Source: Trichoplax adhaerens (lineage: Eukaryota; Animalia; Placozoa). Taken from it: DNA of 64,000 bases. The position numbers were made by a program, and so were the translations under genes. The stretch is taken from assembly GCF_000150275.1 (NCBI RefSeq), contig NW_002060947.1:8107880-8171879 (forward strand), in the 5' to 3' direction. Each line of letters begins with the position of its first letter. Within the stretch, counting starts at the first letter, position 1. Positions 2,203 to 26,897 of this stretch are shown in pieces. The notes beneath the pieces are model-generated. The model did not search any database, had not been told where the DNA came from, and was given only the letters and a program-made list of their open reading frames with translations.

Positions 2203-4329
2203 ATGTCAAGTGATTCAAAAGTTAAACCGAAAGATGTTCAATTAAGTTGGACATCGAATATTAATGCTGATGGGGAGTATATTCGTGCAGTCTCAACATT
2301 TCGCAATAGAGTCAAAGCTGATGGAAGTGGATTTTTTCCAGCGGAAAGTGGCCGGTATCACTTGTATATCTCTTTTGGTTGTCCTTGGGCTCATCGAACA
2401 CTACTCTATAGAAAATTGAAAGGCTTAGAAAACGTTATTACTGTTGATGTTGTCGATTGGCATCTTGCTGAAGGTGGTTGGAAATTCAATCCCGACAGAC
2501 CCGGTTGTACAACGGACAGAGTCAATAACTTTGAATATTTAAGTCAAGTGTATCATCTATCCGATCCTGACTATAATGGACGTGTTACTGTACCTGTCCT
2601 ATTTGATAAAGTCAAAAATATTGTTGTTAACAACGAATCTAGTGAGATAATATCCATGCTAAACAGCGAATTTAATGAATTTTGTGCTACACCGGAACAA
2701 CGCGAGTTGGATCTACGTCCCTCTCACTTAGCTTCAGAGATTGATGAATTGAATAGCTGGATATACGCGTAAGAAAAGTTATTGCAGGATACGTTATATA
2801 ATTGTTGCTGTAAATTACAGTAACCTTATACTAACTGAGTAACGACATGTTTTAAAATTGAGAATTAAACAGAAACCTATGCTGAGTTTGAGTCTTACAT
2901 GTATCATTAATAATCGTAATTACTTATTAAAGTTTAAAAACAGTGATCGTATCTTCAAAGCGAGCTTGATCTTACATACTCGGATGTTTCATAACGCTAT
3001 TACAATCTCGCTTATGTAGAAGAATCATAAGCAATAATCTTTGAAACTGCTTCGTTAATCGTCGTTAGATTTTTAATACCGTATTGCGTTGCTTACGATC
3101 CTTAGGCAAATCAATAATGGGGTTTATCGTGCTGGCTTTGCCAGGAAACAACCTGCTTATGACCGAGCAGTAATTGAAGTCTTTGAAGGATTAGACAAAG
3201 TCGAAGGAATTCTTGCTAAAAATCGTTACCTTACAGGAAAAGAAATAACGGAAGCTGATGTTCGATTATTTGTTACATTGATTCGGTTCGATTTAGTCTA
3301 CGTGCTACATTTTAAGGTAGGTCTGAAATTTTAAGATGTCAAAAGTTTAAAATGCAAATCATCCTTGATTTAAATTAAAAAATTCTGTTGGTAATATGTC
3401 TAATATTGAAGACATAGTTTAAACCAATTTTCTCTATTTTCATCAGTATAGTGATTGCTCTAAATAGCAGTAAGGATTTGAATACTCTAGGATAAAATGC
3501 TTTCCTGCCATTAATATAATGTAGAATGTTTCACAAGGTTATGCCTTAATATAAAGTGAGAAATCTAACGTAAAGTAGTCCAGGGATAAAATGTCACGTA
3601 CATATTAAATGATCAAGATCATACAATTACTACTATACATCTGGATGAAAGTAATATAAAAATAATATACAATTAACTACAGGATCAAATATCAGTAGCT
3701 AAGTTATCATATCTACGAGTACATGAACTATTCCATCTACGCTAAACGCATTTTGATGATTAAAGATGATGTGGTATAAGTTTTATTAGAAGAGTTGGGT
3801 AGTCTACTTGCATCGTAAATTTTTCATAGGTTAAAAGCTTACAAGTAGCTTAATTAAAAATCTTTAATAATTGATTTTATAGTGCAACCTCAAACGCATT
3901 ATTGACTATCCTAATATCTGGGGCTATGTGCGTGATATATATCAGACACCAGGAATAAGCGATACCATCAATTTTGAACATATGAAAAAGCACTATATGG
4001 TAAGAATTTAAGAGAAATAGTTATTCAAATTACCGTGTCCATATGCATTCAACATAAACTGTAGAAATAAGAATAATCAAATTGCATAAAAATTGGTTAG
4101 CCTACTACGATACATGCACCCAATGATCCTTACGTAGAATAATTACCATAAATAAAATTAAGTTTAGAATAACCTAAATGTAAATAAAATATTTGAGATC
4201 AAAGGCTAACTCACTACTTGGATGTTACTTTAGGTCAGCCATGACAGCATTAATCCCCGCGCTATTGTTGCTAAAGGACCAGCTATTGATTTCAATTTAC
4301 CTCATGATCGAAAGAAATTGGATCAATAA
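2203..4329 (+). CDS. Glutathionyl-hydroquinone reductase (GHR, Xi-class / omega-like GST, YqjG/ECM4 family), copy 1, canonical, 329 aa, 4 exons
   Basis: Exons 2203-2768, 3106-3316, 3883-3999, 4234-4329; all GT-AG and in frame. Motifs [106 protein letters not shown] 2203 preferred over the TTG start of the ORF track. Confidence 0.93.
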
Positions 4330-6497: not shown

Positions 6498-8204
6498 ATG
6501 GCAAATGATTCCAAGTTATCCAATGATAAAGGCGAATTTATTCGTGCTACTTCATCGTTTCGTAATTGGGTAAAGGCTGATGGTAGTAGTCCTTTTCCTG
6601 CCGAAAAGAATCGCTATCATTTGTATGTGTCTCTCAGTTGCCCATGGGCTCATCGCACCTTAATCACCAGAAAATTGAAAGGCCTCGAAAATATCATAAC
6701 GGTCGATATAGTTGACTGGCTTCGAACATCAGCGGGCTGGAGATTTAGTCCGGAGAAACCTGGATGTACAGCAGATACCGTAAATGGTAAGGAGTACGTT
6801 GAGGAAATCTACAAATTAGCCGATCCGCTTTATACAGGCCGAGTGACTATTCCGATTCTTTATGATAAGATCGCCAAAACTATAGTCAACAACGAGTCTA
6901 GTGAAATTATTCGCATATTAAATTCGGAATTTAACGCATTATGTGCAACATCTCAACAACGTGATTTGGATTTATATCCACAAGAAGTAAGGCAGGAAAT
7001 TAATGCCCTAAATGGTTGGATTTACAGGTATCTTGTGAATAATTTTCGATAGACAACTTTGATAGTATCTCTTTCGTAATGCAATGTTATTCTTTACCTT
7101 TACAAGATCATAACACATGATCCACTTTTATCAGCTCTTGTTCATAGTAATGCATTAATAGCTAGTCAACACCACTGTAATTATGCCATAGAGCAGATTG
7201 GTGACTGTTATTGCCAAATAGAAATTGATTAAGTTATATATATACGCTTATGAGGCAATGACACCTTTGCGAAACTTCACTAGCCTGTAGTTAGAGGAGA
7301 TTTGCGGAAATTAAGCTATAAGAATATATTGCTGGCTTGTAATTTATGGTTTCTACTGATATCACTTAGTTTAACAGAAAAAATCTTATCTGATTACACT
7401 TGCAAAAATTTGTTTACCTCCTATATAAAGCCAGATCAACAACGGTGTTTATCGTGCCGGTTTTGCAACAACACAAGAAGCCTATGATAATGCTGTTGAC
7501 GATGTTTTCGATGGGTTAAACAAAGTCGAAGCCATACTATCGAAACGTCGCTATCTGACTGGTGATCAAATAACGGAAGCTGATATTCGAATATTTCCTT
7601 CATTAGTTCGATTTGACACTGTTTATGTGCAACATTTTAAGGTAAGATTCTTCTGTACATGAAGAGTGGAGTAGATAGAGGATACTATAATAGTAGTTTA
7701 GATTAAAATAGCAGATTGCAATTTTTTTATGACTACAGACAATAGCTAAGAATCTAGAATTTTGGATGAATAGTTGTTCTACTATCAGATCTTCTCCATT
7801 GATACGATTCGTTTTCCATTTTATTCCTAAATATTTAGTGCAATATTAGGCGCATCATTGATTATCCCAATATATGGGGCTATTTACGTGACTTATATCA
7901 AATCCCTGAATTTGGTAGTACGGTTCATATGGAACACATTAAGAAGAGCTATATGGTAATAACTCGCAAATATTAAAGATTTATAGATAGTTCATAGGCA
8001 AAATTTCGAATACACCGTGTAGCTTGGATACGTATATCGAGCACTACACAGTTACTAGTAAGTATTATACCGATGATTCATTCTTACAATAACCTTATAA
8101 TTTTTATCTAGATGAGCATGGAGAATATAAATCCGAATGGCGTAGTTGCTAAAGGACCTGAAATTGATTTTAACACTTATCACGGGCGTGATAAATTATA
8201 CTAA
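6498..8204 (+). CDS. Glutathionyl-hydroquinone reductase, copy 2, canonical, 316 aa, 4 exons
   Basis: Exons 6498-7027, 7431-7641, 7839-7955, 8112-8204. Motifs [76 protein letters not shown]; same intron positions and phases as copy 1. Confidence 0.93.
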
Positions 8205-11175
8205 TTAGGGGTAAAAATTCCATCTTCTAAGCAATGCATTAGAATTTACAGCACTTATTATTTTGTAGTAAGTGTTTGACATTTCGGATGTTAGTATACC
8301 TTTATTCATTGCATTCTAAATCAACTTGCAATAGCAAACTTTGTAAAATACTTAAGACAAGTACTTAAATCATCTGGAAAGAATTAGCTTACAGTTTGAA
8401 ATAAACGTATTAGTATTGATAATCCTTTAGTGTAGATTGGATGTTAAGAGTATAAAAAGTATAAGCTATAGCTATCAATATCAATAAATGTTTCTATTTA
8501 GCATGTATCTAATGTTTACTAATCAATGGCATACCAGGCATACCAAGATTGGTTATTAGTGTTTAAAGTATAAAATTAAGGTAGCATTTTCAATTATTTT
8601 TTGAAGTTTTAACTTGCAGTTTCGAAGTAAGAGCAACTCTAATTCTGCTTAATAAATTTTATCATCTTAGCAAGTAATTAAACGGTAGCGATCTAATTAC
8701 TGTAACTGCAAAATCTTTAGATTGCATAACTTGAAATATCTAATGGTTTCGATTTTGTCTTTATTTTCTTATATCGTAACCTTTAATAACTAACAGTATA
8801 CGAACAATGCTTGCTAATGTTATCTCAACAATGCTAATCGATATTGCGTAATTCAGCTGTAAATTTACAACGAGTTCTAGCTTATGGTTTAGTTTATTGT
8901 GATAAATGCATTGACTGAGCCTTTGAACGAAGAGGTCGTAAGAGATTCAAAGTCATAAGTAGAAAAGAATATATCTGACTTTAATTTCGTTAGCATCTTC
9001 ACTTATAGACTTCTGCAGTATTCGCGATATCATTAAATTGTTACCTGCTGCACAAATATGAAAACGAAAATTTAGTAACTATTCTATTTTATTGGTACGT
9101 CTCCTTGAGCTACAGAAATGCTTATTGATCATTTTGTTGAGTTCAAAACTGGTACGGGGCAAGTTCCTCCTTATTAATTCAATAATCTATGTTATGCAAA
9201 TTTTGAGAATAATTCATATTACAAGCTTTAATACAGTAGGTAACTCCTACGGTTTATAGGTTGAAGATTTCGAAGAACATCAGCAGAAACTTAATGATGG
9301 CTGCGATTAACAGCTAGCTAGCTCATAATGATAGTGGCTTTAACAATACAGAACACTGTAATACCTTTGCATTCCTTCTATATACTCAGTCTCTCTTCGA
9401 TATTGCAAATAGGCAAAGGCTAGCTTACACGACTTCTCCCAATGCAATTTGTATATTAAAATTTCTACGTACTAATTATTACTTGCCAACATTATCACTT
9501 GAAATTTTAGTATCAAAATAATAAATTTGAAATTTATTTTTTAAATATATGTATGCCAAGTACTGTTTAAAACAGTAGCTATCGGAAAGTATCTAACAAA
9601 ATACACCTATGTTTATCCCAAATCAATCTGTTATATTTACACGTAGTTTAATTCGACCTTACGCTTTCAGCATCAGTAATAAGTAACCATTTGCCCATAT
9701 GTTACGATGCGTAAGTTCGTCCTAATTATTGAGTAATATTAAATATTGTTTGTGTGGATTGACGTTGTATTAATTATCATTTCTTCATACAATCTGTTTA
9801 ATATAACTTTAAAAGGATAGTTTTATTTTATGTGCATCAGGAGTTTCTGACGAGACTATAAAAGGCTGGTGCCTGAAGATCCCTTTTTAGTTAGTTAGTC
9901 GGTTAGATAGTCAACTAGTTTATCAATTGATATTTAATTGTAAAGATTATAATCTTGGGTGCCAAGATTTCTTCAGTAATAAATGATATTAAATCTCTGA
10001 CTGTCTCGTCTACACTATCTGTGACGCTATAATTATACCATAGTATTCAGTCCTTGGAACTGAATTATTTGATGATATAGCTAATCTCGCCTCTTTAAGT
10101 TAGTAAGTGGCGTTCTCCACAAGGATTGGCGTGTGTAGACTACTTTGTCACTAGTGGTGTGTGACACCATAATTGCCCGCTAAATTTTATATCTTCCTCC
10201 CTGTGTTCAGACTAATTCTTGAAGTTGAGTAATTTCTGAGATAATGTTCAAATCTTGAAAATTTATAAAGTTTAAATAAGTCATTAGATGTATTGAAAGG
10301 GAAAAAATTCAATAATATAAGACTTATTTATTTAGGCTATGTCTAATACTCGCGATATTCGCTGTAGTGTTTAGTTTAACCCTATATTTACTTAGAAGCG
10401 TTGTTCGACTCGTAAAAATTTCAGTAGACGACCAGTTGATATAAATTTTATTTTTTAACGATTAAAAATCTGAATTTTAATAACCGCATCATAGATAAAT
10501 TATCAAAACTAAAGTCACATCGCTCGAGGCAGCATTTTCCACTATACGTATATAATGACATGAAAAGAGTAATTTACGTATGAGATTTAAACATTTCACT
10601 ATTGTCCAACTTCAGAATTTGTAATGTTACTACGCCTTATAGTATTGGTACTAGGTTTGTAAAATTTCTAGTTATTACTATTTAACTCACACATATTAAT
10701 AGTACTGTAAACTCCTACAAATACTTGCTGTACTATAGCATCGCCACAACGCCCACTGTCATTTTACTTCTTTCATACTTACCGCCAAGACTATAATTAT
10801 ATGTGCATAATTAATTATTAAACTTTGTAATGGTATTGCTCCGTGTATTAGATTAACAAAAAACCAAGAGGACAGTTACCAAGCATTCTGTATTTTGATA
10901 AGTAGTACTGCACTATTCTCTCCAATAGCAGTAAAGTAACTGAAGTTATTTTACAAACCATTACCGTGCATCATTTTAATTCTTTGGTGCCATTTGGACG
11001 AAACTACTCGATCAAAGTTGATTTTTATCGTTTACGTGAGGTATTACGTAAGCATTACTTAAGTTTAGTACAGCACGATATTTTAAATATACGTACATCT
11101 AATACAATGTAAATCACCTTCTCGATTTCTGTATTATTTTTATAGAATAGCATTGCTTTCAATTCGAATTGAAAA

Positions 11176-12727
11176 ATGTCTGACCAAGGAAGTGACAGTG
11201 TTAAGAAAATTACAAGTTTTAACGGTCGTGTTTCTAAGGATGGATCTGGCCAATTTCCAGCACAGAAAGGTAGATACCATTTGTATGTTAACCCAGGTTG
11301 TCCTTATGCACAACGAGTCATGATCATGAGAACGTTGAAAGGTTTAGAAGATATCATTACGATGGATATTACACACTGGTATATTCATGAAAACGGTTGG
11401 TTTTTCGACGAGACAGTAGATACGTGTACTAAAGATACAGTTAATGGCTTCAAATTTTTAAGAGAGGCTTACGAACAGACTAATACAAAGTATAGCGGTA
11501 GAATTACTGTACCCGTACTTTACGACAAGGTTAACAAGGTCATCGTTAATAACGAATCTGCCGAAATCATGGAAATTCTAAACAGCGAATTTAATGAATT
11601 TTGCTCTACTCAAGAGCAAAAGGATTTAAATTTATATTCTAAAGAGCATGAAGAAACGGCCAAGGAATTATTAGGCTGGATAACACCGTAAGTGATACTT
11701 AGTGTACTTCCAGCAAAGTGCTATTAATGTGATCTAAATTGGATGTCGACGATACGAACATAGTCGTAAACTGATCGTAAACTTGCTACACAGTACAGTA
11801 TATTGGATCAGTTACTTACACTCATTATTACTTCATTGATAGATAGATCACGATCTTTATCATGACTAATTCTATTTTTGCCCTTATCATTGTTCATGAA
11901 TGACTAGAAACATTATTTCCAGAGTCTTTCGTGTTCGTGATGCCACTGATCAAGAAAGTTATAATCAATCTGTCGATACTCTATTCGAGAATCTCGATCG
12001 ATTAGAAAAACACCTTTCTAATCGTCGTTACCTAACAGGAAAGACTATAACGCACGCAGATGTCAAGTTATTTGTAGCATTAGTTCGTTTCGATGTGGCA
12101 TATTACGTGGTGTATAAGGTTAGTTATCAGTTCTGAGCGTTCTAACTTTGTGCTAAATATACAATAATGCTATGAAAATAATACCAACCTAAGATTTATA
12201 CAATAAATGTAAATAGTCTTACGATAAAATTTGGCAGGCTCAGTTACTTTAACACTATTTCTTGATTGTGAATTATAATTGATTGAGTTTCTTCTGTGAT
12301 GAAATGGTAGTGTAATACAAAACGTATTGCTGATTATCCAAACATTTGGGGCTATTTGCGAGATCTTTATCAATCTCCAGGCTTTGGAGAAACGGTTAAT
12401 ATTGAGCATATTATGAAGCTACACTATGTAAGTGAATATCTTATTTACATTGCTTTGTACACTTGAAATTATTAGAAATTGTGGATATTGCAATTTAACT
12501 TATTTTACGATAAAAATTTAAATTTATTATTGTATTGGTTTTAACTTCTACTCTTTTAAGTTTATTAGTTTACTCTGATTAAAGCTACGTAGCACTGTAT
12601 AAACTTTTATTTATCTGATGTATTGTAGGTGAGCGACAAAAAACAGAAGCCTACTAAAATCTGTCCTAAAGGACCAGTTGTCGACTTTACTGGCAAGCAT
12701 GGACGTGAAGCATTAGCATCAGCATAG
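11176..12727 (+). CDS. GHR-like protein, copy 3, derived subfamily (CPYAQ), 312 aa, 4 exons
   Basis: Exons 11176-11687, 11908-12118, 12311-12427, 12629-12727; intact frame. Motifs NPGCPYAQR, RITVPVLYDK, VNNESAEI, NIISRVFR (in place of INNGVYR), RFDVAYY, HIMKLHY, QKPTKICPKGP. Confidence 0.92.
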
Positions 12728-14257
12728 AATACATGTGTGCAATTACTTGGTCTAGTAAAACGACGGTAGAGTCGCAGCCATTGCAGTAAATCAATCTAGT
12801 TAAGAGAAATGTAAAAGATATCTATATCTAGCATAAAGACTGTTTTAGAGATATAGCACTACAGCTCGTATCTATTTATTTAATGAAGAAACATCTTAGC
12901 TATTTAGATCTTAGTATTTGAAATGTACTGAGAGTTTTACATTTTAACCTATTACACTATTATTTAAAATATACTTGATATTCTCGGTAAGCTTATGCAC
13001 ATGTAAATATACTTTGGGCATTATTCAGTTGCAATAGATAACTTACACATAAGGAACATAGCAAGAGGTGATGGTTGTATAGACACTTTAATCTACCGTC
13101 AATACTACAGTAATCGTATAGCGTAGAGGCTGCAATTATTTTGATGTTGAACTTATGACAGTAATTAGAACTTTCTAGCTTAATTTGTAGTTCGTAGTCG
13201 TCATAGTAAAATAATCATATGTTTAATCAAAACTTATCAAATTACAATAATAAAAAAATATCACGAAATATATTTGGATGATAATGTACCTCGGTCGATT
13301 TCGAATGAAGATACATCCTCACTCTGGAAATGAACATGGAAACGCAGATAGACTTTCAAGACTAGTTTAAATTTTAGAGTTTAAGACTGATAAAGAATAT
13401 AATAAATGATGCTATAATTTTGAGGAATATGAGAATATTAGGGATAATAAATGTAGTAAAGCACCCATATTTGAGGATATCGTAGCTGTATCCATCTTGA
13501 AATAATGTAATATCATACTGTCAATAAATATTCTATGACTTGGTTAACTAAATGCAACCACAGTAAAATCGTTAATCGTAAGTAGGCTGTTAATTCAGTT
13601 ATTTCTAGAACCACGTACGGTATTTCACATAAAATTACTGCTATTAAATGTATAGAGTGCGCCCAGATGTGACGAAATTTACAGTATAATCTTTAATAAA
13701 AAACAGCATACGAACAGTCCATTTCAATATTATCTTAACAATGCTAATGGATGATGTATATCTCAGCTGTGAATTTACAACAAGTTCTAGCTTATAGTTT
13801 AGTTTATTGAGATAAATACATTGACTGAACCTTTGAACGAAGAAGTCGTAAGAGATTTAAAGCCATAGAGCAGAAAAGATACAGAAAAGAATATGTCTGG
13901 CTTTAGTCTCTTTAACATCTTCACTTATAGACTTCTACAGTATTCGCGATACTATTAAATTATTACCTAATACACAATTACGAAATTGAGAATTTAGACA
14001 AGATTCTATTTTATTGGTACTTCTTATTGAGCTACAGAAATGCTTACAAGAAACTTGCTTAAGATTTTAAAGAAAGTTAATAAATTGTCAAGGTATAAAA
14101 GTTTCATAGTCATATAATTAATGCGATACTTAGCCTTCAATATAATAAGTGGCAATATGGTAAGTAAATCTATTCAAAAAATTGCGATACTTCAATCTCT
14201 ATTAGTCATTCTGTTAAGTATAAAACCGGTACAGAGGTAAGTTCCTCGTTTATAATC

Positions 14258-14307
14258 NNNNNNNNNNNNNNNNNNNNNNNNNNNNNNNNNNNNNNNNNNN
14301 NNNNNNN
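14258..14307. other. Assembly gap (50 N)
   Basis: Run of 50 n inside the upstream flank of GHR copy 4. Confidence 0.99.
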
Positions 14308-15947
14308 GACGATGGCTGCAATCAACAGCTAGATCATAAAGATAGTGGTTGTAACAACATCTAATAGTGTAATATAACTAGCTACCAAATTACTTAATTG
14401 TTTTTAGCCTACACTAGAGTATATTGCCTCTGCATTACTTGTACAGTATGTACTCAGTTACTCTTCGATATTGTAAATAGGCAACATCTAGCATACACAA
14501 CTTCTCTAAATACAATTCAGATATTAACATTTCTACGTACTAATTCTTACTTGCCAATATTATTACTTGACTTTTTAGTAGCTGAATTTGAAATTTATTC
14601 TTAAATATATTTAGTACCATTCAAGATAGCAACTACCGGAAAGAATCTAACAAAATACGCCTATATTTCATTCCTGACTAAGTAGCACTATTGGTTTAAC
14701 TACCGAGATTATTAATAACTGTTTACTATTCCCAGTATCTATATTAGCGTAAATGATAATTTAAGACCATTTCAATCAATCTTAAATTAACCAGTAGTTT
14801 AATTTGACCTTACGCTTTCAGCAACAATAATAATAAGGTAACAATTTTACTCTCTAATCTAAGTTGGTCATTCATAAGTGTAACATCGTTATAACAGAAT
14901 CTATGGTAAATAATAGGCTGTCTATATATCAATAGTTCGCAGTTAATCAATTAATTTGGCTATAATGACCAAATTTTATGTCTAACTAACTGTGTTATGG
15001 TTAATCCTCGAAGTTGACTAACGCCTGAGATAATGTTCAAATCTTTCAAATTCAATTAGTTTAATTAAATCGGTATATGTAATGAAAGAGGACAAATTAA
15101 ACGACATAAGATCTATTTGTAAACGCTACGTCAAAATAATTATCAAGATATTCCCTATTGCATCTAATAGAATCCTAAACTGCTCTAAAAATATGAATTC
15201 AATAACGAGAAGTATTATTTGAGCCTTTAAAAAATTCAGTTTAGGACCAAATGATATAAATTTTATTTTTTTATGGTTTAAAATCTAAATTTTAACAACT
15301 ATATAGCAGATTAATGATCAAGACAAAAAGTCAAATCATTTGAAGTAGCATTTCCTACTATACTATAAGTAATTTACAGTATATAATGATATGAAAAAGA
15401 GAAATCTTGATGTAAGAACATTTTACAATGGACCAACTTGGGAGTTTGTGATATTACTTCGCCTTATAGAATTATTACCATTTTAACTCATGCATAATTA
15501 ATTGCAAACTCCTCCGAATCGTTTCTGTATTATACGTACTGAAGCGGCGCCGTAACGCCCATTGCCATTTTACTGTACTTTGCTCATACTTACTGCAAAA
15601 GCACTTGCATAATTAATTATTAAACTTTGTGCCGGCATTATTCCCGTATTAGATTGACAAAAGAACGAGGAGGGCAGTTGCAAAGCATTCTGCACTTTGA
15701 TAGGTGGTACGGTAGTGCACGATTCTCCAATATTAGTACAGATCATTTTTGTGCACTATTTTAATTCTCTGGTGCTATTTGGACGAAGCTACTCGATCAA
15801 AGTTGATTTTTATCGTTTACGTGAGGTATTACGTATGCATAGCTCAGGCCTATTACTTTAAATATCTGGTTAATACAGCGTAAAAGAACTTCTCGATTTC
15901 TGTTTTGTTTTTTGTAAAATAGCATTGCTTTCAATTCGAATTGAAAA

Positions 15948-17451
15948 ATGTCTGACCAAGGAAGTGACAGTGTTAAGAAAATTACAAGTTTTAACGGTCG
16001 TGTTTCTAAGGATGGATCTGGCCAATTTCCAGCACAGAAAGGTAGATACCATTTGTATGTTAGCTTAGGTTGTCCTTTTGCACACCGAACCATAATCACG
16101 AGAAAGTTGAAAGGCTTAGAAGATATCATTACGATGGATATTACACACTGGTATATTCATGAAAATGGTTGGTTTTTCGACGAGACAGTAAATATGAGTA
16201 CTAAAGACACAGTTAATGGCTTCAAATTTTTAAGAGAGGCTTACGAACAGACTAATGCAAATTATAGCGGTAGAATTACCGTACCAGTACTTTACGACAA
16301 GGTTAACAAGGTCATCGTTAATAACGAATCTGCCGAAATCATGGAAATTCTAAACAGCGAATTTAATGAATTTTGCTCTACTCAAGAGCAAAAGGATTTA
16401 AATTTATATTCTAAAGAGCATGAAGAAACGGCCAACGAGCTATTAAGCTGGATATTACCGTAAGCGATACTTAGTGCACTTTCAGCAAAGTGCTATTACT
16501 ATGATCAGAGTTGAATGTCTACAGTACGATACGAATATAGTCGTAAACTTGTCAAGTGCAATATATTAGATCATGGTCTTCACCATGACTAATCAGATTT
16601 TCGTCCTTATACATTATTCATGAATGACTAGAAACATTATTACTGGAGTTTATCGTGTTGGCAATGCCACTGATCAAGAAAGTTATAATCAATCTGTCGA
16701 TACTCTATTCGAGAATCTCGATCGATTAGAAAAACACCTTTCTAATCGTCGTTACCTAACAGGAAAGACTATAACGCACGCAGATGTCAAGTTATTTGTA
16801 GCATTAGTTCGTTTCGATGTGGCATATTACGTGGTGTATAAGGTTAGTTATCAGTTCTGAGCGTTTCTAACTTTGTGCTAAATATATAATAATGCTATGA
16901 AAATAATACCAACCTAAGACTATGCAGTAAATGTAAATAGTCTTACGATAAAATTTGGCAGGCTCAGTTACTTTAACACTATTTCTTGATTGTGAATTAT
17001 AATTGATTGAGTTTCTTCTGTGATGAAATGGTAGTGTAATACAAAACGTATTGCTGATTATCCAAACATTTGGGGCTATTTGCGAGATCTTTATCAATCT
17101 CCAGGCTTTGGAGAAACGGTTAATATTGAGCACATTAAGAATTTATACCATGTAAGTGAATATCTTATTTACATTGCTTTGTACACTTGAAATTATTAGA
17201 AATTGCGGATATTGCAATTTAACTTATTTTACGATAAAAATTTAAATTTGTTATTGTATTGGTTTTAACTTCTACTTTTTTAAGTTTATTAGTTTACTCT
17301 GATTAAAGCTACGTAGCACTGTATAAACTTTTATTTATCTGATGTATTGTAGGTGAGCGACAAAAAACAGAAGCCTACTAAAATCTGTCCTAAAGGACCA
17401 GTTGTCGACTTTACTGGCAAGCATGGACGTGAAGCATTAGCATCAGCATAG
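15948..17451 (+). CDS. GHR-like protein, copy 4, derived subfamily (CPFAH), 312 aa, 4 exons
   Basis: Exons 15948-16459, 16632-16842, 17035-17151, 17353-17451; intact frame. Motifs SLGCPFAHR, NIITGVYR, RFDVAYY, HIKNLYH, QKPTKICPKGP. Confidence 0.92.
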
Positions 17452-20275
17452 AATACATGTGTGCAATTAGTTGGCGTAGTAAAATGACAGTACAGTCGCT
17501 GCAATTACGGTAAATTAATCATTAAGAGAAATGTAAAGATATCTATAACTGGCATAAAGACTGTTTTAGAGATATAGCACTACAGCTCGTTTCTAGTCAT
17601 TTAAGAAACATCTTAGCTATTTAGATCTTAGTATTTGAAATTTACTGAGAGTTTTAGGTTTTAACATCTTACACTATTATTTGAAAAATTTGATATTCTC
17701 GTCAAGCTGATGAACATACAAATATACTTAGGGCACTATTCAATTGCGGTAGATAACTTTCACATAAAGCGCATATCAAGAGATGATACGTAGTTGTATA
17801 GACATTTTAATCTACAGGTAGGCCAGACAATGCTAAAATAATTATATAGCGTAAAGGCTGTAATAAGAACTTATCTAGCTTAATTTGTAGTATGTAGATG
17901 TTATGGTAAAAAAGTATGTGTTTCATTATTGATTATCAAAATACAATAATAAAAAAAATATGACGAAATAGATTTTGGATAATGTTCTATTAGAAATTCT
18001 ACAATTTTAAGTTTAATATCTATATGATTCTAAATTTTACCTTCAATGAGAAATTTTTACTTTAGTTCTATCTTCGAAATGTTTTAGAATGGGTAAAGCT
18101 TTATACAGTGTAAAGTAATTATTAAATGCACGCAATTCATCACTGTACCATCATACGGTTTCGTACTCTACGTCGAACTTGTATTTGCCTTTCTTTAATC
18201 ATTAAGGTATACACATTCTTAATTAATTTCGATAATTTGATAGCAATTCCATTTTACTGGTATATCTCATTGAGCTAAATAAATGCTTACAGGAAACTTG
18301 CTTAAGATTTTTAAGCAAGTTACTTAGTTGTCGACGTATAAAAGTTTCACAGTCGTATAATACGATACTAAGCGTTCAAATTTAATAAGCGGCAATATAG
18401 TAGGTAAAATTGTTAAATAACTTGGGATACTTCAATGATCATTCGGCTTAGCTCAAAAGCGGTACATGGCAAGTTCCTTCTTTATTAATTCAATAATCTA
18501 TTGCATGCAAATTATTAAAGCAATTTATGCTACAATGTTTAATGCAATAGATAACTCTTAGGATTTATTTAAGTTAAGGACGTTGAAGAACGTTTGCGGA
18601 GATTTGATGACGGCTATGATTAATAGCTAGTTAACTCATGAAGATAGTAGTTATAACGATATCTAACACTACATGTAATACAGCTAGCTACTAAATTGTT
18701 CATATATTTTCAGTCTATATTACAGTATACTGCTGTTACACCCTTCTATACACTTGGTCACTCTTCGATACTGTAAATATACAACAACTAGCATACACTA
18801 CTTCCCTAAATAAAATTCATATATTAAAATTTCTACGTACTAATCCTAACTTGCTATTATTATCACTTGATACTATAGTGTCAGAATAATAAATTTGAAA
18901 TTTATTCTTAATTATACGTACTTCCAGTACCGTTCAAGATAGCTCTACTGGAAAGTATCTAACAAAATACGTTTATATTTCATGATCGACTGATTCGCAC
19001 TATTTATTTGACCATTGAGATTATCAAATACTATTTATTGTTTGCAATATCTACATTAGCGGAAGTGATAATCTTAATCCCAAATTAATCTTTTATTAAC
19101 AAGTAGCTAGTTCCGATCTTACGCTTTATGCAACAGTAATAAGTAGCAATTATACCCTCTAATTTAAGTCCGTCATTTGTATATCATTATAGCATGCTAT
19201 ACATTCATAAATAGACAGTGTATATTCGAACGGTACACAGTCAATCAATTAATTTTGCTATAATGATTAAATTTAGTGTCTAGCTTGCTGTGTTATGGTT
19301 AATCCTCGAAGTCGAGTCATGTCTTAGATAATCTTTAAATCTTGCTAATTCAATAAGCTTAAATAAATCGTAATAGGTAATGAAAGAGGACAAATTGAGC
19401 GGCAAAAGATCTATTTGTAAGCGCTACGCAAAAATAATATTTATGATATTCTCTCTAGTGTCCAATAGAATCCTATAATGTTCTAAAAATATAAATTCAC
19501 TTACGAAAAGTGTTGTTCGAGCTACTTAAAAATTCAGTATACGACTAATTGATACAAATTTTATTTTGTTATCATTTAAAATCTGAATTTAAACAATTGT
19601 TTTGTATATTTAATGTCAAGAAAAAAATCAAACGATACAATGCAGCATTCCCCACTAAACTGTAACTAATACACAGCTTGTAATGATATGAAAAAGAGCA
19701 ATCTTCATATTCAATTTAAACATTTCGCTATGGTCTAACTTGGGAATTCACAATATTACTACGCCTCATAGTATTGTTACTAGGCTTGTACAACTCTAGT
19801 TGTTACTATTGAACTTATGGATAATTAATTAATCGTAAACGCCTCCAAATCGTTGCTGTACCACAGCGTCGCCGCAAAGCACACTATCATTTTACTTCTC
19901 TCATACTTACTTACTGCAAGGGCGATAAAAACTCTTGCATAATTAATTAAACTAATTATTAACTTTGTACCGGTATTGTTCCCTGTATTAGGTTGACAAA
20001 AGAAGGAGGAGGGTAATTGCCAATCAGGTATTCTGCACTTTGATAGGTGGTATTAATAGTATTGCAGATCATGATAGTGCATTATTTTAATTCTCTGGTG
20101 CTATTTGGACGAAGCTACCCGATCAAAGTTGATTTTTATCGTTTACGTGAGGTATTACGTATAATATTGCTTAGGCATAGCTCTTTAAATATTAATGGTT
20201 ACTGCAGCGTAAAAGAACTTCTCGATTTCTGTATTATTTTTATAGAATAGCATTACTTTCAATTCGAATTGAAAA

Positions 20276-21846
20276 ATGTCTGACCAAGGAAGTGATAGTG
20301 TTAAGAAAATTACAAGTTTTAACGGTCGTGTTTCTAAGGATGGATCTGGCCAATTTCCAGCACAGAAAGGTAGATACCATTTGTATGTTAGCTCAGGTTG
20401 TCCCTTTGCACACCGAACCATGATTACAAGAACGTTGAAAGGTTTAGAAGATATCATTACGATGGATATTACACACTGGTATATTCATGAAAACGGTTGG
20501 TTTTTCGACGAGACAGTAGATACGTGTACTAAAGACACAGTTAATGGCTTCAAATTTTTAAGAGAGGCTTACGAACAGACTAATGCAAATTATAGCGGTA
20601 AAATTACTGTACCCGTACTTTACGATAAGGTTAACAAGGTCATCGTTAATAACGAATCTGCCGAAATTATGGAAATTCTAAACAGCGAATTTAATGAATT
20701 TTGCTCTACTCAAGAGCAAAAGGATTTAAATTTATATTCTAAAGAGCATGAAGAAACGGCCAACGAGCTATTAAGCTGGATAACACCGTAAGTGATGCTT
20801 GGTATATGTACTTCCAGTAAGTGCTATTACAAAGATCAGAATTGAATGTCTACGAAACGAACATAATTACAAACTTATTGCAAGCTTGCTAAACTTTGCA
20901 ACATTTTAGATCATTTACTTACGCTCATTACGACGGTATTGATAGATAAATCACGATTTTCACCATGACTAATCAGATTTTCGTCCTTATACATTATTCA
21001 TGAATTACTAGAAATATTATTTTCGGAGTCTATTATGTTGCTAATGCCAAAAATCAAGAAAGCTATGATCAATCTGTCGATACTTTATTCAAGAATCTCG
21101 ATCGATTGGAAGAGCACCTTTCTAATCGTCGTTACTTAACAGGAAAGACTATAACGCACGCAGATGTCAAGTTATTTGTGACTTTAGTGCGCTTCGATGT
21201 GGCATATTACCTAGCGTATAAGGTTGGTTCCATCAGTACTGAACATTTCTAACTATATAGTAGTTAAATACATGATAATACTATGATAATAGTACCGATT
21301 TAAGATTATACAGTAAAGGTGAATAGTCTAAAGATAAAATTGACAAGCTCCGCTACTTTAACGTTATTTCTTGATTCTGAATTGGAATTGATTGAGTTTC
21401 GTTTGTGGTGAAATTGTAGTGCTGTATAAAGCGTATCGTTGATTATCCAAACATTTGGGGCTATTTGCGAGATCTCTATCAATCTCCAGGCTTTAAAGAA
21501 ACGGTTAATATTGAGCATATCAAAAAGTTATACCATGTAAGTGAATATCATATTTGTATTACTTTGTACACTTAAAATTATTTGCAATTGTTGCTATTGT
21601 TATTTAACATATTTTTTGCGATAAAAATTGGAATTTTTTATTGTATTAGTTTTCTGTGCTATTTTAAGTTTATTTGTTTACCGTGCTCTGATTAAAGCTG
21701 CGTAGTTCTATATAAGGATTGTTTTTTTTGTATCCTACGCGTTATAGGTGAGCGACAAAAAGCAACAGCCGACTAAAATCTGTCCTAAAGGACCAATTAT
21801 CGACTTTACTGGCAAACATGGACGTGAAGTACTCGCTTCAGAATAG
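20276..21846 (+). CDS. GHR-like protein, copy 5, derived subfamily (CPFAH), 312 aa, 4 exons
   Basis: Exons 20276-20787, 21012-21222, 21420-21536, 21748-21846; intact frame. Motifs SSGCPFAHR, NIIFGVYY, RFDVAYY, HIKKLYH, QQPTKICPKGP. Confidence 0.92.
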
Positions 21847-23478
21847 AGAACGCGTATATGTGTGCGATCATTTGGCCTAGTAATATGACAGTACATTGTC
21901 TTCAAGATATAGGGCTGCAGCTTGCAGCTAGTTATTGATTTAAGAAACATCTTAGCTATTTATATCTTAGTATTTGCAATGCATTGAGAGTTTTTCGATT
22001 TTAATATCTTACGCTATTATTTAAAACACTTGATATCACCGGCAAAGTGATGCATGTACTGTACAAGTATGCTTTGGGTATTAGTCAGTTTGCAGAAGAT
22101 AACTTTCACATAAGGGACATATCAGGAGGTGATAGATAGTTGCATAGACATTTTAATCTTCAGGTAGACCTGATAATACTACAATATTTGTATACGATAA
22201 AGGCTGTAATTATTTTGATATTAGATTTATAACAGCAATTAGAACTTTACTAGCTCAATTAGCTGTAGTACGTAAACGTCATGGTAAAATAATCATGTAT
22301 AGAATCATAGATTAATTATCAAAGTATAATAATAAAACAATATGACGAAATATATTTTGGACAATGTTCTATTAGAAATTCTACAATATTAAGTCTTTAC
22401 TATTTGTAAGATTTTTAGATTTTTTCCTTTAATGAAATTTTTTACTTTAGTTCTATCTTCGAAATGGTTTTAGATTGAGTAATGCTTTATACGTTGGAAA
22501 CCAATAATTACAATACATGTACGTAATTCCTCACAGTACTATGACACAGAGTCGCACTCTACGTCAAAGTTGTGTTTTCCTTTCTTTAATTAATCATTAA
22601 GGTATAGGTATTCTAATTAAATTTCGAGATCTTCTATGTTATACGCATAATATGATGAAAGCACATTCGTTTAGAATTGGCTAAAGCTAAAGTGCAGTTG
22701 AATTCGTTAAGTTCTTAAATTCAATGCAGTAAAAATACTTTTAATAAGTACACTCTAAAATAGTCTGTTCTACTTTAGGTGATTCTTATGCTCAAATCTA
22801 CACACACGGGAATCACGTTTAATTATTACTTCTAGTTATGGAAAAATTGAAGAGGGTCAACTTGAATTTGAAGACTAATACCGTGTGCTTCATTCTTTTT
22901 AGCTATATTACCATAATATTGGACGGTATTTATATTATATTTTTAATATTATGTCAGGTATTTGGAGCTTTTACCAACACTATTGTCTGTTATTCTCATC
23001 CAATTTAAATCAATCCTTGATTAATTATCATTAAGTACGTGTATCTATTTTGACCTTTTGGTGAAATTGATGATGAATATGTATCCTAATGCAATCCAAT
23101 TAGGCGATACATGATAACAATAGTAAAAGCTCGCTGTTGCATGATGAGCAATACCAGTAATCCTATTGCAAGGCTGCATCTGTCCCATTCGCGATCTAAT
23201 AGCTACTTTGTGCTTCTGTGAATTAAAATTACATATCGATTGCATTTTGGCTTTACTTGCATAATTCATGAGTATGGTAAGTCATACTTTAAAGTACTGT
23301 AAAGTATGAGTTAAGTTCTCTTTCATATCCTATAGTATCAGGTAGTGCAAATTCATGACATGCGTTAGTGCGCTTAGACAGCCTGTTATTGATAAGCGTC
23401 TATCTATCATTTTGCAGATAGGTATACGAGTTCCATAGTAACGTCTACGATGACTTAATTAAGTAATTCTAACTATAG

Positions 23479-24337
23479 ACTATTTCAAAATGCACTGTCA
23501 TTTGCTGCTGCAAGGGGTTAAGTATAAGAGACTACGACAAGAAGGTAGCAAAAAATGCATTGTCATTTAGCAAGCTGTACGTGATTGAATACATAAGGGA
23601 CTACTGTAAGAATCAACTAGCTTAAATACTGAAGTACTGCCATGGACTATTTAAGAATGCACTGCCATTTAGTGCTGTGAGTGATAGAGTATCCTAGCCT
23701 GTTCGTCAGAGTCGTATGCTGTAGGTCATATATCTCCATTTTGCAGATACATCTACTTAATTAAGTCTAACTATTTCAAAATGCACTGTCATTTGCTGCT
23801 GCAAGGGGTTGAGTATATGAGACTACGACAAGAAGCTAGCAAAAAGTGCATTGTCATTTAGTGAGCTGTACGTGATTGAATACATAAGGGACTGCTGCAA
23901 GAATCAACTAGCTTAAATACTGAAGTACTGCCATGGACTATTTAAGAATGCACTGCCATTTAGTGCTGTGAGTGATAGAGTATCCTAGCCTGTTCGTCAG
24001 AGTCGTATGCTGTAGGTCATATATCTCCATTTTGCAGATACATCTACTTAATTAAGTCTAACTATTTCAAAATGCACTGTCATTTGCTGCTGCAAGGGGT
24101 TGAGTATATGAGACTACGACAAGAAGCTAGCAAAAAGTGCATTGTCATTTAGTGAGCTGTACGTGATTGAATACATAAGGGACTGCTGCAAGAATCAACT
24201 AGCTTAAATACTGAAGTACTGCCATGGACTATTTAAGAATGCACTGTCATTTAGTGCTGTAAGTGATAGAGTATCCTAGCCTGTTCGTCATAGTCGTATG
24301 CTGTAGGTCGTATATCTCCATTTTGCAGATACATCTA
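23479..24337 (+). repeat. Tandem repeat, about 3 copies of a 291-bp unit, each containing three diverged sub-repeats
   Basis: tatttcaaaatgcactgtcatttgctgctgcaagggg recurs at 23481, 23772 and 24063 (period 291). Copies are near-identical. The internal motif TGCAYTGYCATTT occurs three times per unit. No ORF of 60 aa or more. Confidence 0.95.
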
Positions 24338-25211: not shown

Positions 25212-26897
25212 ATGTCTACCAAGAAAGAAGTGACTAGTTTTAATGGCCGAGTTTCCAAGGATGGATCTGGCGAATTTCCAGTGGCCAAGGGCAGATATCA
25301 TTTATACGTTAACCCTGGTTGCCCTTATGCGCATCGAGTCATCATCATGAGAATGTTAAAAGGTTTGCAAGATGTCATCAGTATGGACACCACCCACTGG
25401 TATGTGCATGAAAATGGTTGGCTATTTGACGATACGGAAGAGAATTGCACCAAAGATTCCATTAATGGCTTTAAATTCCTTAAAGAAACTTATATGCAGA
25501 CAAATCCCAACTTTAGCGGTAAAATTACCATCCCTGTGCTGTATGATAAAGTCAAGAAAGTCATCGTCAACAACGAATCTGCCGAAATTTTGGAGATGTT
25601 AAACAGTGAGTTCAATGAATTTTGTCCAACTCAAGAGCAAAAGGACCTCAATATATTCCCTAAGGAACATGAAGAAGCTGCCAAAGAATTACTATCATGG
25701 ATATCACCGTAAGTACTGTGATGTTGATCGATACTGATGTTGCATTCCTGCTTCGTGCAGATACAACGCCAACTGTTCCGAGCCACTAAGGTTATACAGC
25801 TCTGTAGACGATCAATCAGTTATCCATTGGATTGACCTCAGATCATATTCCATTTCAAATGTCGTCATGATTGCTGTCTGTATGCAAAACCAACTACTTT
25901 TTGCATTCAAATGAACGCAACATTTTAGTCGCAGTAACGATGTATTGACACATTCTTATGATTTAGCCCCTTGTCCTACTGGACAAGTGGACAGTGCAGA
26001 TTTCAGACGAGTGTTGTGAATGCAAATTTCCAAATGATGATTCTGTATTGATCAAATAGGAATATCATTACTGGACCTTATCGTGTTGGATTTGCTACTT
26101 CGCAAGAAAATTACGACAAGGCTAGCGATTCCCTGTATGAAAATCTTGACCGATTGGAAAAACACCTATCCAAAAGTCGCTACTTGACCGGAAATTCATT
26201 CACACATGCTGACATCAAGTTATTCGTAGCATTGGTTCGCTTTGATCTTGCCTTTTACACAATCTTCAAGGTTAATATTAGTATTGATGAATTAGTGATT
26301 CACAGTCAGAAAATGACTTCAATTAATTGAAAGATTATGGCTACTAATTACTACAATGCAGTAGTGCCTACATACATGATAGCAACCTTTGATAGTTTCC
26401 TTTCTCATTACTATAAAGTTGATAGTATACGCCGCTGATAGCAATACTTTTGCAATAAAATTGAATTTATTATTGCAGTGCAATTTCAAGCGAATCGCTG
26501 ACTATCCAAATATCTGGGGTTATTTGCGAGATCTTTATCAAACTCCCAGCTTTGGAGATACGGTCAACGCTGATCACATCAGGAAAATGTACTTTGTAAG
26601 TATGCCTTGTTTTCAATGTCAAGGATACTTGTAATAACTAGAAATCATTAATATTAATGCTTAACAAGCATTTCATGGGATATTCATGACATTGAATCGC
26701 TTATATTACCTAACTCAACTACAATCCTACCATTGCAAGTCCTTGATCGCAATGAATGCAAACATGTTGAACAACTCTTTTTATCCTCTATATTATAGTT
26801 GAGCGACCGAAAGCAGAAACCAACTAACATTCTTCCCAGAGGACCCGTTGTTGATTTCTCAGGCAAACATGGACGTGAAGCTTTAGCATCAGCATAA
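25212..26897 (+). CDS. GHR-like protein, copy 6, derived subfamily (CPYAH), 307 aa, 4 exons
   Basis: Exons 25212-25708, 26060-26270, 26479-26595, 26799-26897; intact frame. Motifs NPGCPYAHR, KITIPVLYDK, VNNESAEI, NIITGPYR, RFDLAFY, HIRKMYF, QKPTNILPRGP. Introns show little resemblance to those of copies 3-5. Confidence 0.92.

What the first reader, a model, noticed from the sequence alone, without database searches (positions are those of the whole stretch)
11290..17151. Hypervariable active-site islands inside otherwise homogenised paralogues (copy 3 vs copy 4)
Seen, by manual comparison: codons 1-38 are identical, then codons 39-53 around the catalytic Cys differ by 10 nt, all non-synonymous (8 aa; NPGCPYAQRVMIMRT vs SLGCPFAHRTIITRK). 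The start of exon 2 differs by 8 nt in 8 codons (SRVFRVRD vs TGVYRVGN) while the rest of exon 2 is identical. Intron 2 (~190 nt) has only ~6 differences and intron 3 (~200 nt) ~3, yet the last 7 codons of exon 3 between them differ by 6 nt (HIMKLHY vs HIKNLYH). Exon 4 is identical. Copy 5 varies at the same three spots (SSGCPFAHRTMITRT, FGVYYVAN, HIKKLYH). Known: these segments carry the CPxA loop and active-site tyrosines of YqjG-type enzymes. Inference: gene conversion homogenises the scaffold and introns while selection preserves or diversifies the substrate pocket, giving a repertoire-like enzyme system.
Basis: partly seen in the sequence, partly recalled or inferred. Interest (0 to 1): 0.88.

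Follow-up and report, generated by a model that had tools for sequence, protein, structure and literature searches.

The report
Gene-converted GST paralogues, divergent active sites
Three neighbouring, nearly identical detoxification-enzyme genes of the simple animal Trichoplax are kept alike by copying sequence from one another, yet differ sharply in three short stretches that form the catalytic pocket, a known evolutionary pattern (as in red/green opsins) seen here in a new enzyme family.

Summary
The window (Trichoplax adhaerens) holds six tandem four-exon Xi-class GST (YqjG/ECM4-type) genes. Copies 3 and 4 are the annotated genes TRIADDRAFT_56969 and 56970. They differ by 40 nt and 25 aa. 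Of these, 24 nt lie in three patches that hold the catalytic Cys loop (Cys63/Trp65 of YqjG), Tyr195 and Tyr296.

The N gap lies in the intergenic spacer. Single DNA contigs from two independent runs bridge it.

Gene conversion is strongly supported. An 0.8-kb c3/c4 tract that includes introns 2 and 3 is 1.8% diverged, against 15-23% in its flanks. Exon 1 is homogenised among copies 3-5.

Spliced RNA contigs show c3-type islands 2-3 and c4-type island 2. All three islands are identical in Trichoplax sp. H2, so they are fixed differences, not hypervariable sites.

Evidence for selection is suggestive only. Island 1 has 10 non-synonymous and 0 synonymous changes, but pooled island dN/dS is about 0.94. 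Island 2 sits at the tract edge. A similar cluster lies in intron 2.

The best reading is functional divergence of the substrate pocket persisting under gene conversion (the Teshima-Innan "divergence peak"). It is not a repertoire system. Relaxed constraint on copy 3 is the main rival. This is a new member of a known kind.

The parts
2203..4329 (+). Copy 1: canonical Xi-GST gene (CPWA, Tyr triad, His pair). Exons 2203-2768, 3106-3316, 3883-3999, 4234-4329.
6498..8204 (+). Copy 2: near-canonical Xi-GST gene (CPWA, Tyr triad, no His pair). Exons 6498-7027, 7431-7641, 7839-7955, 8112-8204.
11176..12727 (+). Copy 3 = TRIADDRAFT_56969, 312 aa. Exons 11176-11687, 11908-12118, 12311-12427, 12629-12727. 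CPYA motif. The Tyr195 equivalent is Phe and the Tyr296 equivalent is His.
   Evidence: All three introns are confirmed by spliced RNA contigs.
11290..11334 (+). Island 1 of copy 3 (codons 39-53): Cys loop and helix alpha-1. It is the c6-like 'type B' form NPGCPYAQRVMIMRT.
11918..11941 (+). Island 2 of copy 3 (codons 175-182, SRVFRVRD). It holds the Tyr195 equivalent (Phe178). It lies at the 5' edge of the c3/c4 conversion tract.
   Evidence: Present in spliced RNA contigs and in DNA contigs.
12407..12427 (+). Island 3 of copy 3 (codons 274-280, HIMKLHY). The Tyr296 equivalent is His279, with Tyr280 next to it.
   Evidence: The RNA contig X20 record 13 links it to the c3-specific 3'UTR.
11946..12744 (+). 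c3 side of the c3/c4 gene-conversion tract: exon 2 remainder, intron 2, exon 3, intron 3, exon 4 and 17 nt of 3'UTR. It has 14 differences in 799 nt.
12195..12203 (+). Non-coding cluster of 4 c3/c4 differences in intron 2, inside the tract.
14258..14307 (.). Assembly gap in the c3-c4 intergenic spacer. The real DNA there is about 120 nt and continuous.
15948..17451 (+). Copy 4 = TRIADDRAFT_56970, 312 aa, identical in Trichoplax sp. H2. Exons 15948-16459, 16632-16842, 17035-17151, 17353-17451. CPFA motif and a full Tyr triad.
   Evidence: Introns 1 and 2 are seen in RNA contigs.
16062..16106 (+). Island 1 of copy 4 (SLGCPFAHRTIITRK), the canonical-like 'type A' form.
16642..16665 (+). Island 2 of copy 4 (TGVYRVGN).
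17131..17151 (+). Island 3 of copy 4 (HIKNLYH).
16670..17468 (+). c4 side of the c3/c4 conversion tract.
20276..21846 (+). Copy 5: intact, 312 aa. Exons 20276-20787, 21012-21222, 21420-21536, 21748-21846. Exon 1 is homogenised with c3 and c4; exons 2-4 are older (dS 0.32-0.38).
25212..26897 (+). Copy 6: 307 aa, identical to Trichoplax sp. H2 RDD43594. Exons 25212-25708, 26060-26270, 26479-26595, 26799-26897. It is the outgroup of c3-c5 and carries the type B Cys loop.
11041..11145 (+). Probable 5'-UTR intron of copy 3 (GT..AG), downstream of a conserved non-coding exon that ends at 11040.
   Evidence: The spliced RNA contig was laid on the homologous c4 positions, so assignment to copy 3 is inferred.

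Best explanation
Copies 3, 4 and 5 are expressed tandem paralogues of a divergent Xi-class, cysteine-type glutathione transferase. Non-allelic gene conversion between the 4.7-kb repeat units repeatedly overwrites most of each gene, introns included.

Three short segments that line the catalytic/substrate (H-site) pocket stay different:
- the Cys loop and helix alpha-1;
- the start of helix alpha-4, with the first triad tyrosine;
- helix alpha-9, with the third triad tyrosine.

The copies have acquired different pocket chemistries. Converted alleles that erase those differences are removed by selection. Once diverged, these segments also impede heteroduplex extension.

The two sides changed in different places. 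Copy 3 keeps the older CPYA Cys loop but has changed the tyrosine segments (G176R, Y178F, G181R, N182D, K276M, Y279H, H280Y). Copies 4 and 5 keep the tyrosines but have rebuilt the Cys loop towards the canonical form (N39S, P40S/L, Y44F, V48T, M51T).

Shown: the clustering, the conversion tracts, the transcription of c3-type islands 2-3 and c4-type island 2, the fixation of all three islands in a second lineage, and the retention of the GSH site. Inferred: that selection, rather than chance tract ends, keeps the islands, and that the substrates differ.
For: - Conversion. The c3/c4 tract 11946-12744 has 14/799 differences, against 104/686 in intron 1 plus downstream DNA (p = 5e-23). The runs of concordant polymorphic sites give p < 1e-4. 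Exon 1 dS between c5 and c3/c4 is 0.09-0.11, against 0.32-0.38 in exons 2-4 (p = 0.002 and 0.0005).
- Active-site location. C42 = Cys63, F/Y44 = Trp65, res178 = Tyr195, res279 = Tyr296, res278/283 = His295/300 (roles from PMC5063366). Fourteen of 25 differences lie within 4 residues of such sites (p = 2.6e-6).
- Family conservation. The c3/c4 differences sit at more family-conserved columns (mean 0.57) than c5-only differences (0.34, p = 5e-4) or c6-only differences (0.44, p = 0.004).
- Island 1. N:S is 10:0 against 9:7 in the rest of exon 1 (p = 0.023). Its dN exceeds exon-1 dS (p = 0.007).
- Mosaic history. In island 1, c3 is closer to c6 (6 nt) than to c4 (10 nt). Elsewhere in exon 1 the figures are 113 vs 16 (p = 2.6e-5). 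A distant placozoan-like exon-1 ORF (P0151) also has the type B loop.
- Not decay of the whole enzyme. W75, V112-P113, E127-S128 and Cys42 are kept in all copies, and c3 keeps 50 of 58 family-conserved positions.
- Real and expressed. Spliced RNA contigs carry c3-type islands 2 and 3 (one linked to the c3 3'UTR) and c4-type island 2. DNA contigs of two runs match. Island 1 was not seen in a copy-specific RNA contig. The H2 orthologue of c3 has identical islands, and c4 is identical in H2.
- The pattern is the one predicted for neofunctionalised duplicates under conversion (PMC3924837; opsins, PMC3213168).
Against: - Pooled island dN/dS is about 0.94, and the island vs non-island N:S contrast (19:5 vs 9:7) is not significant (p = 0.17).
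- Using exon-wide dS as the neutral yardstick is biased, because conversion lowers it.
- Island 2 is contiguous with the unconverted, indel-rich intron 1, so it may simply mark the tract end.
- A comparably tight cluster lies in intron 2, so one of the two clusters inside the tract has no coding role.
- In island 3 both lineages changed (4 in c3, 2 in c4), as expected for an unconverted remnant.
- Copy 3 lost two catalytic tyrosines and His46. It also differs at 3 residues between T. adhaerens and H2, while c4 and c6 differ at none. This fits relaxed constraint.
- H1 and H2 are too close to show long-term conservation of the islands.
- No biochemical data exist.
Confidence: 0.55

Rival explanations
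1. Relaxed constraint on copy 3 plus chance tract ends. Copy 3 is a decaying or catalytically impaired duplicate whose scaffold is repeatedly repaired by conversion from functional neighbours. The 'islands' are simply the pieces that conversion has not yet overwritten. No selection keeps them.
For: - c3 lost Tyr195- and Tyr296-equivalent residues and the conserved His46 and Gly181.
- The c3-lineage changes are almost all non-synonymous, which is compatible with omega = 1.
- c3 shows 3 aa differences between T. adhaerens and H2, against 0 for c4 and c6.
- Island 2 lies at the tract edge.
- An intron cluster shows that patchy conversion occurs.
Against: - The island 1 differences are derived on the c4/c5 side. 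Those copies are intact, and c4 is perfectly conserved in H2, so c3 decay cannot explain that island.
- c3 has no stop or frameshift, is spliced and transcribed, and keeps the Cys and the whole GSH site.
- A Tyr is re-created next door (Y279H plus H280Y).
- All three patches coincide with pocket motifs.
Confidence: 0.27
2. Mutational clustering. The islands arose from a few multi-nucleotide mutation events (error-prone repair or patchy heteroduplex repair during the conversions themselves). They were fixed by drift and happen to lie at the active site.
For: - There are four c3-specific changes within 12 nt in island 3 and four within 19 nt in island 2.
- A 4-event cluster lies within 9 nt of intron 2.
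Against: - Both lineages changed within islands 1 and 3 and within the intron cluster, so these are not single events.
- Three independent clusters all hitting pocket motifs is unlikely.
- The island 1 states of c3 match c6 and P0151, so they are inherited, not new.
Confidence: 0.1
3. Assembly artefact. Copies 3 and 4 are allelic haplotigs or chimeric joins across the N gap.
For: - A scaffold gap lies between the copies.
- Short-read contigs of exon 1 are collapsed, at 3x depth.
Against: - Single DNA contigs in two independent runs bridge from the c3 downstream region across the gap into the c4 upstream region.
- The spacers are collinear with the other spacers.
- RNA and DNA contigs link each island to copy-specific flanks.
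- The independent H2 assembly encodes the same c3-, c4- and c6-type proteins.
Confidence: 0.02

Closest known systems
Primate L/M (red/green) opsin genes under gene conversion; the Teshima-Innan 'peak of divergence' model (PMC3924837, PMC3213168)
   Same: These are tandem duplicates. Conversion homogenises introns and most exons. Divergence persists in short segments that carry the function-defining residues.
   Different: - Here the protein is an enzyme, and the divergent segments include catalytic residues (the Cys loop and triad tyrosines), not tuning sites.
- At least three copies take part.
- In island 1, linked synonymous divergence is absent.
- Long-term maintenance across species is not yet shown.
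E. coli YqjG, S. cerevisiae ECM4 and P. chrysosporium GHR1 (Xi-class GST / glutathionyl-hydroquinone reductases)
   Same: - Same fold family (E = 2e-81 to YqjG over residues 15-307).
- Catalytic Cys at the start of alpha-1.
- GSH-site residues are conserved.
- Copy 1 has CPWA, the Tyr triad and the His pair.
   Different: - Copies 3-6 have CPYA or CPFA instead of the CPWA described as strictly conserved.
- They lack both quinone-site histidines (Leu/Met278, Asp283).
- c3 keeps only one triad tyrosine in place, and c6 keeps two.
Omega and Lambda class Cys-GSTs (CPFA, CPF/YA motifs; PMC4138524 Table 2)
   Same: The active-site tetrapeptide of copies 3-6 (CPFA, CPYA) is the Omega/Lambda one. A deglutathionylating Cys chemistry is expected.
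   Different: The fold, length (312 aa) and sequence are Xi-class, not Omega or Lambda.

Membership tests
Xi-class GST / GHR (YqjG, ECM4) | GST_N_2 plus GST_C_2 domains and full-length similarity to solved Xi structures | tested here: met
   Pfam PF13409 and PF13410 on the exons. P0268 vs 3r3e/4g0i: E = 1.8e-81 over residues 15-307.
Xi-class GST / GHR (YqjG, ECM4) | Catalytic Cys in a CPWA motif | tested here: not met
   The Cys is present in all six copies. Trp is present only in c1 and c2. c3 and c6 have CPYA; c4 and c5 have CPFA. CPYA/CPFA variants also occur in other database Xi-like proteins.
Xi-class GST / GHR (YqjG, ECM4) | Triad of tyrosines (YqjG Tyr195, Tyr253, Tyr296) | tested here: inconclusive
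   Met in c1, c2, c4 and c5. c3 has F178, Y236 and H279 (with Y280 adjacent). c6 has Y178, F236 (with Y237 adjacent) and Y279.
Xi-class GST / GHR (YqjG, ECM4) | Quinone-site histidines (ECM4 H345/H350, YqjG H295/H300) | tested here: not met
   Only c1 has both. c3-c6 have L/M278 and D283.
Xi-class GST / GHR (YqjG, ECM4) | GSH-dependent reduction of glutathionyl-hydroquinones | not testable with these tools
   This needs an enzyme assay.
Duplicates with selection-maintained divergence under gene conversion (Teshima-Innan / opsin type) | Statistically supported conversion tracts between paralogues, including non-coding DNA | tested here: met
Duplicates with selection-maintained divergence under gene conversion (Teshima-Innan / opsin type) | Divergence peaks centred on function-defining residues | tested here: met
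Duplicates with selection-maintained divergence under gene conversion (Teshima-Innan / opsin type) | Differences conserved between orthologues of different species while flanks evolve in concert | tested here: inconclusive
   The islands are identical in Trichoplax sp. H2, but H1 and H2 are very close. No distant placozoan locus could be fetched.
Duplicates with selection-maintained divergence under gene conversion (Teshima-Innan / opsin type) | Demonstrated functional difference between the copies | not testable with these tools
   This needs biochemistry.
   Each copy has one fixed state. That state is the same in T. adhaerens and H2 proteins for all three islands, and in the DNA and RNA contigs of the four runs laid for islands 2 and 3.

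The most novel reading that the evidence does not exclude
The array works as a cassette system. Short active-site segments are kept as discrete alternative 'modules': the type A or type B Cys loop, the Tyr or Phe alpha-4 start, and the YH or HY alpha-9 motif. Gene conversion shuffles these modules among otherwise identical scaffolds, so that placozoan lineages assemble different combinations of pocket chemistries from a small tandem family. Two observations point this way. The type B loop is shared by c3 and c6. Residue N185 appears both on the H2 copy 3 protein and on a c4-type RNA contig of organism B (the label carried by two of the four laid runs).
Probability: 0.1. Interest if true: 0.75.

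Novelty: new member of a known kind. Interest (0 to 1): 0.45.

Why it matters
It is a clean, compact case of concerted evolution and functional divergence acting on the same genes. It involves three genes in 11 kb and introns that serve as neutral controls. The divergent residues are catalytic ones, not peripheral tuning sites.

It defines a placozoan subfamily of Xi-class GSTs (CPYA/CPFA, no quinone-site histidines, variable tyrosine triad). The chemistry of this subfamily is unknown and easy to test with recombinant proteins.

It also adds to the evidence that Xi-class GSTs, often said to be absent from animals, are present and diversified in early-branching and other invertebrate animals.

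Tried and rejected
The DNA around the only distant placozoan-like relative (P0151/P0270, exon-1 ORF) could not be fetched.
- The one metagenome scan with P0268 found only relatives at 53% identity or less, mostly intron-less and bacterial-like. It found no placozoan locus.
- The representative-library search returned no close relative. It showed only the breadth of the family.
- Enrichment of c3/c4 differences at invariant family positions (conservation >= 0.8) was tested and is absent (4 of 25 vs 59 of 312, p = 1.0). Only the comparison with the control sets of differences is significant.
- A recent c6-to-c3 patch conversion as the source of island 1 was considered and rejected. c3 shares none of c6's five synonymous or private states in the island (TGC, GCG, CCT, CAT, ATC).
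- Conversion of island 1 of c4 from c1 or c2 was rejected. The codons differ (AGC vs TCT, TTA vs CTC/TTT, TTT vs TGG).
- PAML, GENECONV and RDP are not installed. Nei-Gojobori counts, a Sawyer-type permutation and a scan statistic were written instead.
- No atomic coordinates are available to scripts. The 3-D mapping therefore rests on the sequence alignment to YqjG plus the published residue roles. No structure was predicted.
- The exon-1 short-read contigs are collapsed consensus sequences of c3, c4 and c5 (3x depth). They were not used as evidence of alleles.
- Spliced models were sent to search tools exon by exon, by reference. The joined proteins were never typed. Full-length searches used the database ids P0268 and P0269, which equal the models. 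Joined CDS were built only inside scripts from window coordinates.

Full report
**What is there**

The window is AT-rich eukaryotic DNA. It lies in a 105.6-Mb assembly of 1414 pieces. Its proteins are identical to Trichoplax adhaerens entries.

It carries six tandem genes on the + strand, each with four exons. Their exons match Pfam GST_N_2 and GST_C_2. Full-length, they match the solved Xi-class GSTs (YqjG E = 1.8e-81; also poplar GHR1, PcGHR1, PcpF, TvGSTX, ECM4). These six are the only members in the genome.

I built the gene models from tblastn and splice sites. All introns are GT..AG and sit at the same three positions and phases.
- Copy 3 equals TRIADDRAFT_56969 residue for residue.
- Copy 4 equals TRIADDRAFT_56970, which is also identical to Trichoplax sp. 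H2 RDD43597.
- Copy 6 equals H2 RDD43594.

Search tools received the models exon by exon, by reference. I did not type the joined proteins. Full-length searches used the database ids that equal them.

**The gap**

The N run 14258-14307 lies in the intergenic spacer. It is 1.5 kb downstream of the copy 3 stop and 1.6 kb upstream of the copy 4 start, so no reading frame is at stake.

Both flanks are collinear with the c2-c3 and c4-c5 spacers. Single DNA contigs from two independent public runs (X2, 2206 nt; X4, 2923 nt) run from the copy 3 downstream region to the copy 4 upstream region. They carry about 120 letters where the assembly has 50 N. The tandem order c3 then c4 is therefore real.

**The observation**

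Copies 3 and 4 differ by 40 nt and 25 aa over 939 nt. Of these:
- 10 nt lie in codons 39-53;
- 8 nt lie in codons 175-182;
- 6 nt lie in codons 274-280.

Codons 1-38, 183-273 and 281-312 are identical. Intron 2 has 4 substitutions and 2 indel columns. Intron 3 has 3 substitutions. Copy 5 varies at the same three places.

Alignment to YqjG gives these equivalences:
- Cys42 = Cys63
- residue 44 = Trp65
- residue 178 = Tyr195
- residue 236 = Tyr253
- residue 279 = Tyr296
- residues 278 and 283 = His295 and His300

The ECM4 structure paper (PMC5063366) names these as the catalytic Cys, the CPWA Trp, the tyrosine triad and the putative quinone-site histidines.

Fourteen of the 25 aa differences lie within four residues of such a site, against 15% of all positions (p = 2.6e-6). 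The sites are clustered, so this p is optimistic.

The c3/c4 differences also sit at better-conserved family columns than c5-only or c6-only differences (p = 5e-4 and 0.004).

**Gene conversion**

Unit-wide alignment shows 15-25% divergence in upstream DNA, intron 1 and downstream DNA. Between 11946 and 12744 there are only 14 differences in 799 nt (p = 5e-23).

A Sawyer-type permutation finds c3 = c4 runs of 27, 27 and 31 polymorphic sites (p < 1e-4).

Exon 1 is a second homogenised block, shared by copies 3, 4 and 5. Its dS is 0.08-0.11. For copy 5, exons 2-4 have dS 0.32-0.38 (p = 0.002 and 0.0005).

**History of each island**

Island 1. Copy 3 (NPGCPYAQRVMIMRT) matches copy 6 (NPGCPYAHRVIIMRM) codon for codon at N39, Y44, V48 and M51. 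It also resembles a distant placozoan-like exon-1 ORF from an ENA contig (P0151, TPGCPYAHRVMIMRK; 71-75% identical to all of c3-c6).
- In the island, c3 is closer to c6 than to c4 (6 vs 10 nt). In the rest of exon 1 it is seven times closer to c4 (113 vs 16; p = 2.6e-5).
- All seven codons with unchanged residues are identical between c3 and c4. c3 shares none of c6's private synonymous states.
- The simplest reading is that the c3 form is the older one. Seven non-synonymous and no synonymous changes then fell on the c4/c5 stem, and three more non-synonymous changes fell in c4. These moved the loop towards the canonical SLxCP(W)AHRT form.
- The Ser39 codon AGC is one step from Asn AAC. It is not the TCT of c1 and c2. 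This rules out conversion from the canonical copies.

Islands 2 and 3. Here the derived states are mostly in copy 3 (G176R, Y178F, G181R, N182D, K276M, Y279H, H280Y).

Position relative to the tract. Island 2 is not inside homogenised DNA. It lies at the 5' edge of the tract, next to the diverged, indel-rich intron 1 and the diverged last codons of exon 1. Island 3 is truly internal (scan p = 2e-4). However, an equally tight cluster (four events in 9 nt) lies in intron 2. In both clusters each lineage has changed. This is what unconverted remnants look like.

**Selection**

| Comparison | Result |
|---|---|
| Island 1 N:S vs rest of exon 1 | 10:0 vs 9:7, p = 0.023 |
| Island 1 dN vs exon-1 dS | p = 0.007 |
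| Pooled islands dN/dS | about 0.94 |
| Islands vs non-island N:S | 19:5 vs 9:7, p = 0.17 |

The yardstick in the second row is itself lowered by conversion. So constraint in the islands is clearly changed, since omega is about 0.2-0.3 elsewhere. Omega above 1 is not demonstrated.

**Reality and expression**

The runs were available only as contigs, so depth cannot rank expression. The contigs do show the following:
- Spliced RNA contigs from two RNA-seq runs confirm all three copy 3 introns and copy 4 introns 1 and 2.
- One 900-nt RNA contig joins copy 3 exon 2, exon 3 with the c3-type island 3, exon 4 and the copy-3-specific 3'UTR.
- Others join the copy-3-specific end of exon 1 to the c3-type island 2, and the copy-4-specific end of exon 1 to the c4-type island 2.
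- Island 1 was not seen in a copy-specific RNA contig; the exon-1 contigs are collapsed or mixed.
- DNA contigs from two runs reproduce c3 islands 2 and 3 exactly.

The H2 orthologue of copy 3 (RDD43596) differs at Q148H, D185N and N190Y only. All three islands are unchanged. The islands are therefore fixed differences between genes, not hypervariable sites.

**Function**

All copies keep the Cys and the GSH-site residues (W75, V112-P113, E127-S128).

Copies 3-6 have CPYA or CPFA, which are the Omega/Lambda-type motifs (PMC4138524). They lack both quinone-site histidines. Copy 3 keeps one triad tyrosine in place, with a new Tyr at 280. Copy 6 keeps two.

Copy 1 is a canonical GHR. I infer that copies 3-6 are GSH-dependent Cys-GSTs with remodelled substrate pockets, and that copies 3, 4 and 5 differ in pocket chemistry. 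This inference is untested.

**Verdict**

The pattern matches the known 'peak of divergence' signature of neofunctionalised duplicates under gene conversion (Teshima and Innan, reviewed in PMC3924837; gibbon L/M opsins, PMC3213168).

I rate this reading at 0.55. Relaxed constraint on copy 3 with chance tract ends is at 0.27. Clustered mutation is at 0.10. Artefact is at 0.02.

I found no paper on this locus.

The metagenome scan gave no placozoan relative. The decisive cross-species test could therefore not be run.

Noticed in passing
window 20276-26897: The annotated protein TRIADDRAFT_25481 (P0267) is a chimeric gene model. It joins exon 1 of copy 5 to exons 2-4 of copy 6. Both real genes (c5 20276-21846, c6 25212-26897) are intact. 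H2 annotates c6 correctly (RDD43594).
   Followed up: yes
window 2203-26897; proteins P0159, P0206, P0212/P0213, P0252, P0018: Xi-class GST relatives are present in other animals (Amphimedon, Ephydatia, Strongylocentrotus, Magallana, Allacma). Several database ORFs end at the same ...W(I/L)YP exon-1 boundary as the Trichoplax genes. The structural literature (PMC5063366) says the class occurs in 'all but animal kingdoms'.
   Followed up: partly
window 11041-11145 (homologous c4 positions 15826-15917): A spliced RNA contig joins a conserved upstream non-coding exon (...CGTGAG) to AATAGCATTGC, 30 nt before the ATG. This gives a GT..AG 5'-UTR intron in copies 3 and 5. Copy 4 has AA instead of AG at that acceptor.
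   Followed up: partly
window 16672 (c4 codon 185): An RNA contig of organism B carries the c4-type island 2 followed by D185N. That is the residue the H2 copy 3 protein has at 185. The DNA contig of a run from the same study shows G (Asp). This may be allelic exchange between c3 and c4 that ends right at the island edge.
   Followed up: no
window 12195-12203: A tight non-coding cluster (1 indel and 3 substitutions in 9 nt) lies in intron 2, inside the c3/c4 conversion tract. Both copies show changes relative to copy 5.
   Followed up: partly
window 12422-12427 vs 17146-17151: Copy 3 has the adjacent pair His279-Tyr280 (CAC TAT). Copies 4 and 5 have Tyr279-His280 (TAC CAT). This is a one-residue shift of the triad tyrosine by two first-position transitions. 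Copy 6 shows a similar shift at the second triad tyrosine (Phe236-Tyr237).
   Followed up: partly
window 23479-24337 and 45399-45633: A 291-nt unit is repeated three times (97% identical) in the c5-c6 spacer. A 116-nt unit is repeated twice further downstream.
   Followed up: no
window 24001-26000, 44001-46000, 62001-64000: Local G+C rises to 0.39-0.40, against a background of about 0.30.
   Followed up: no
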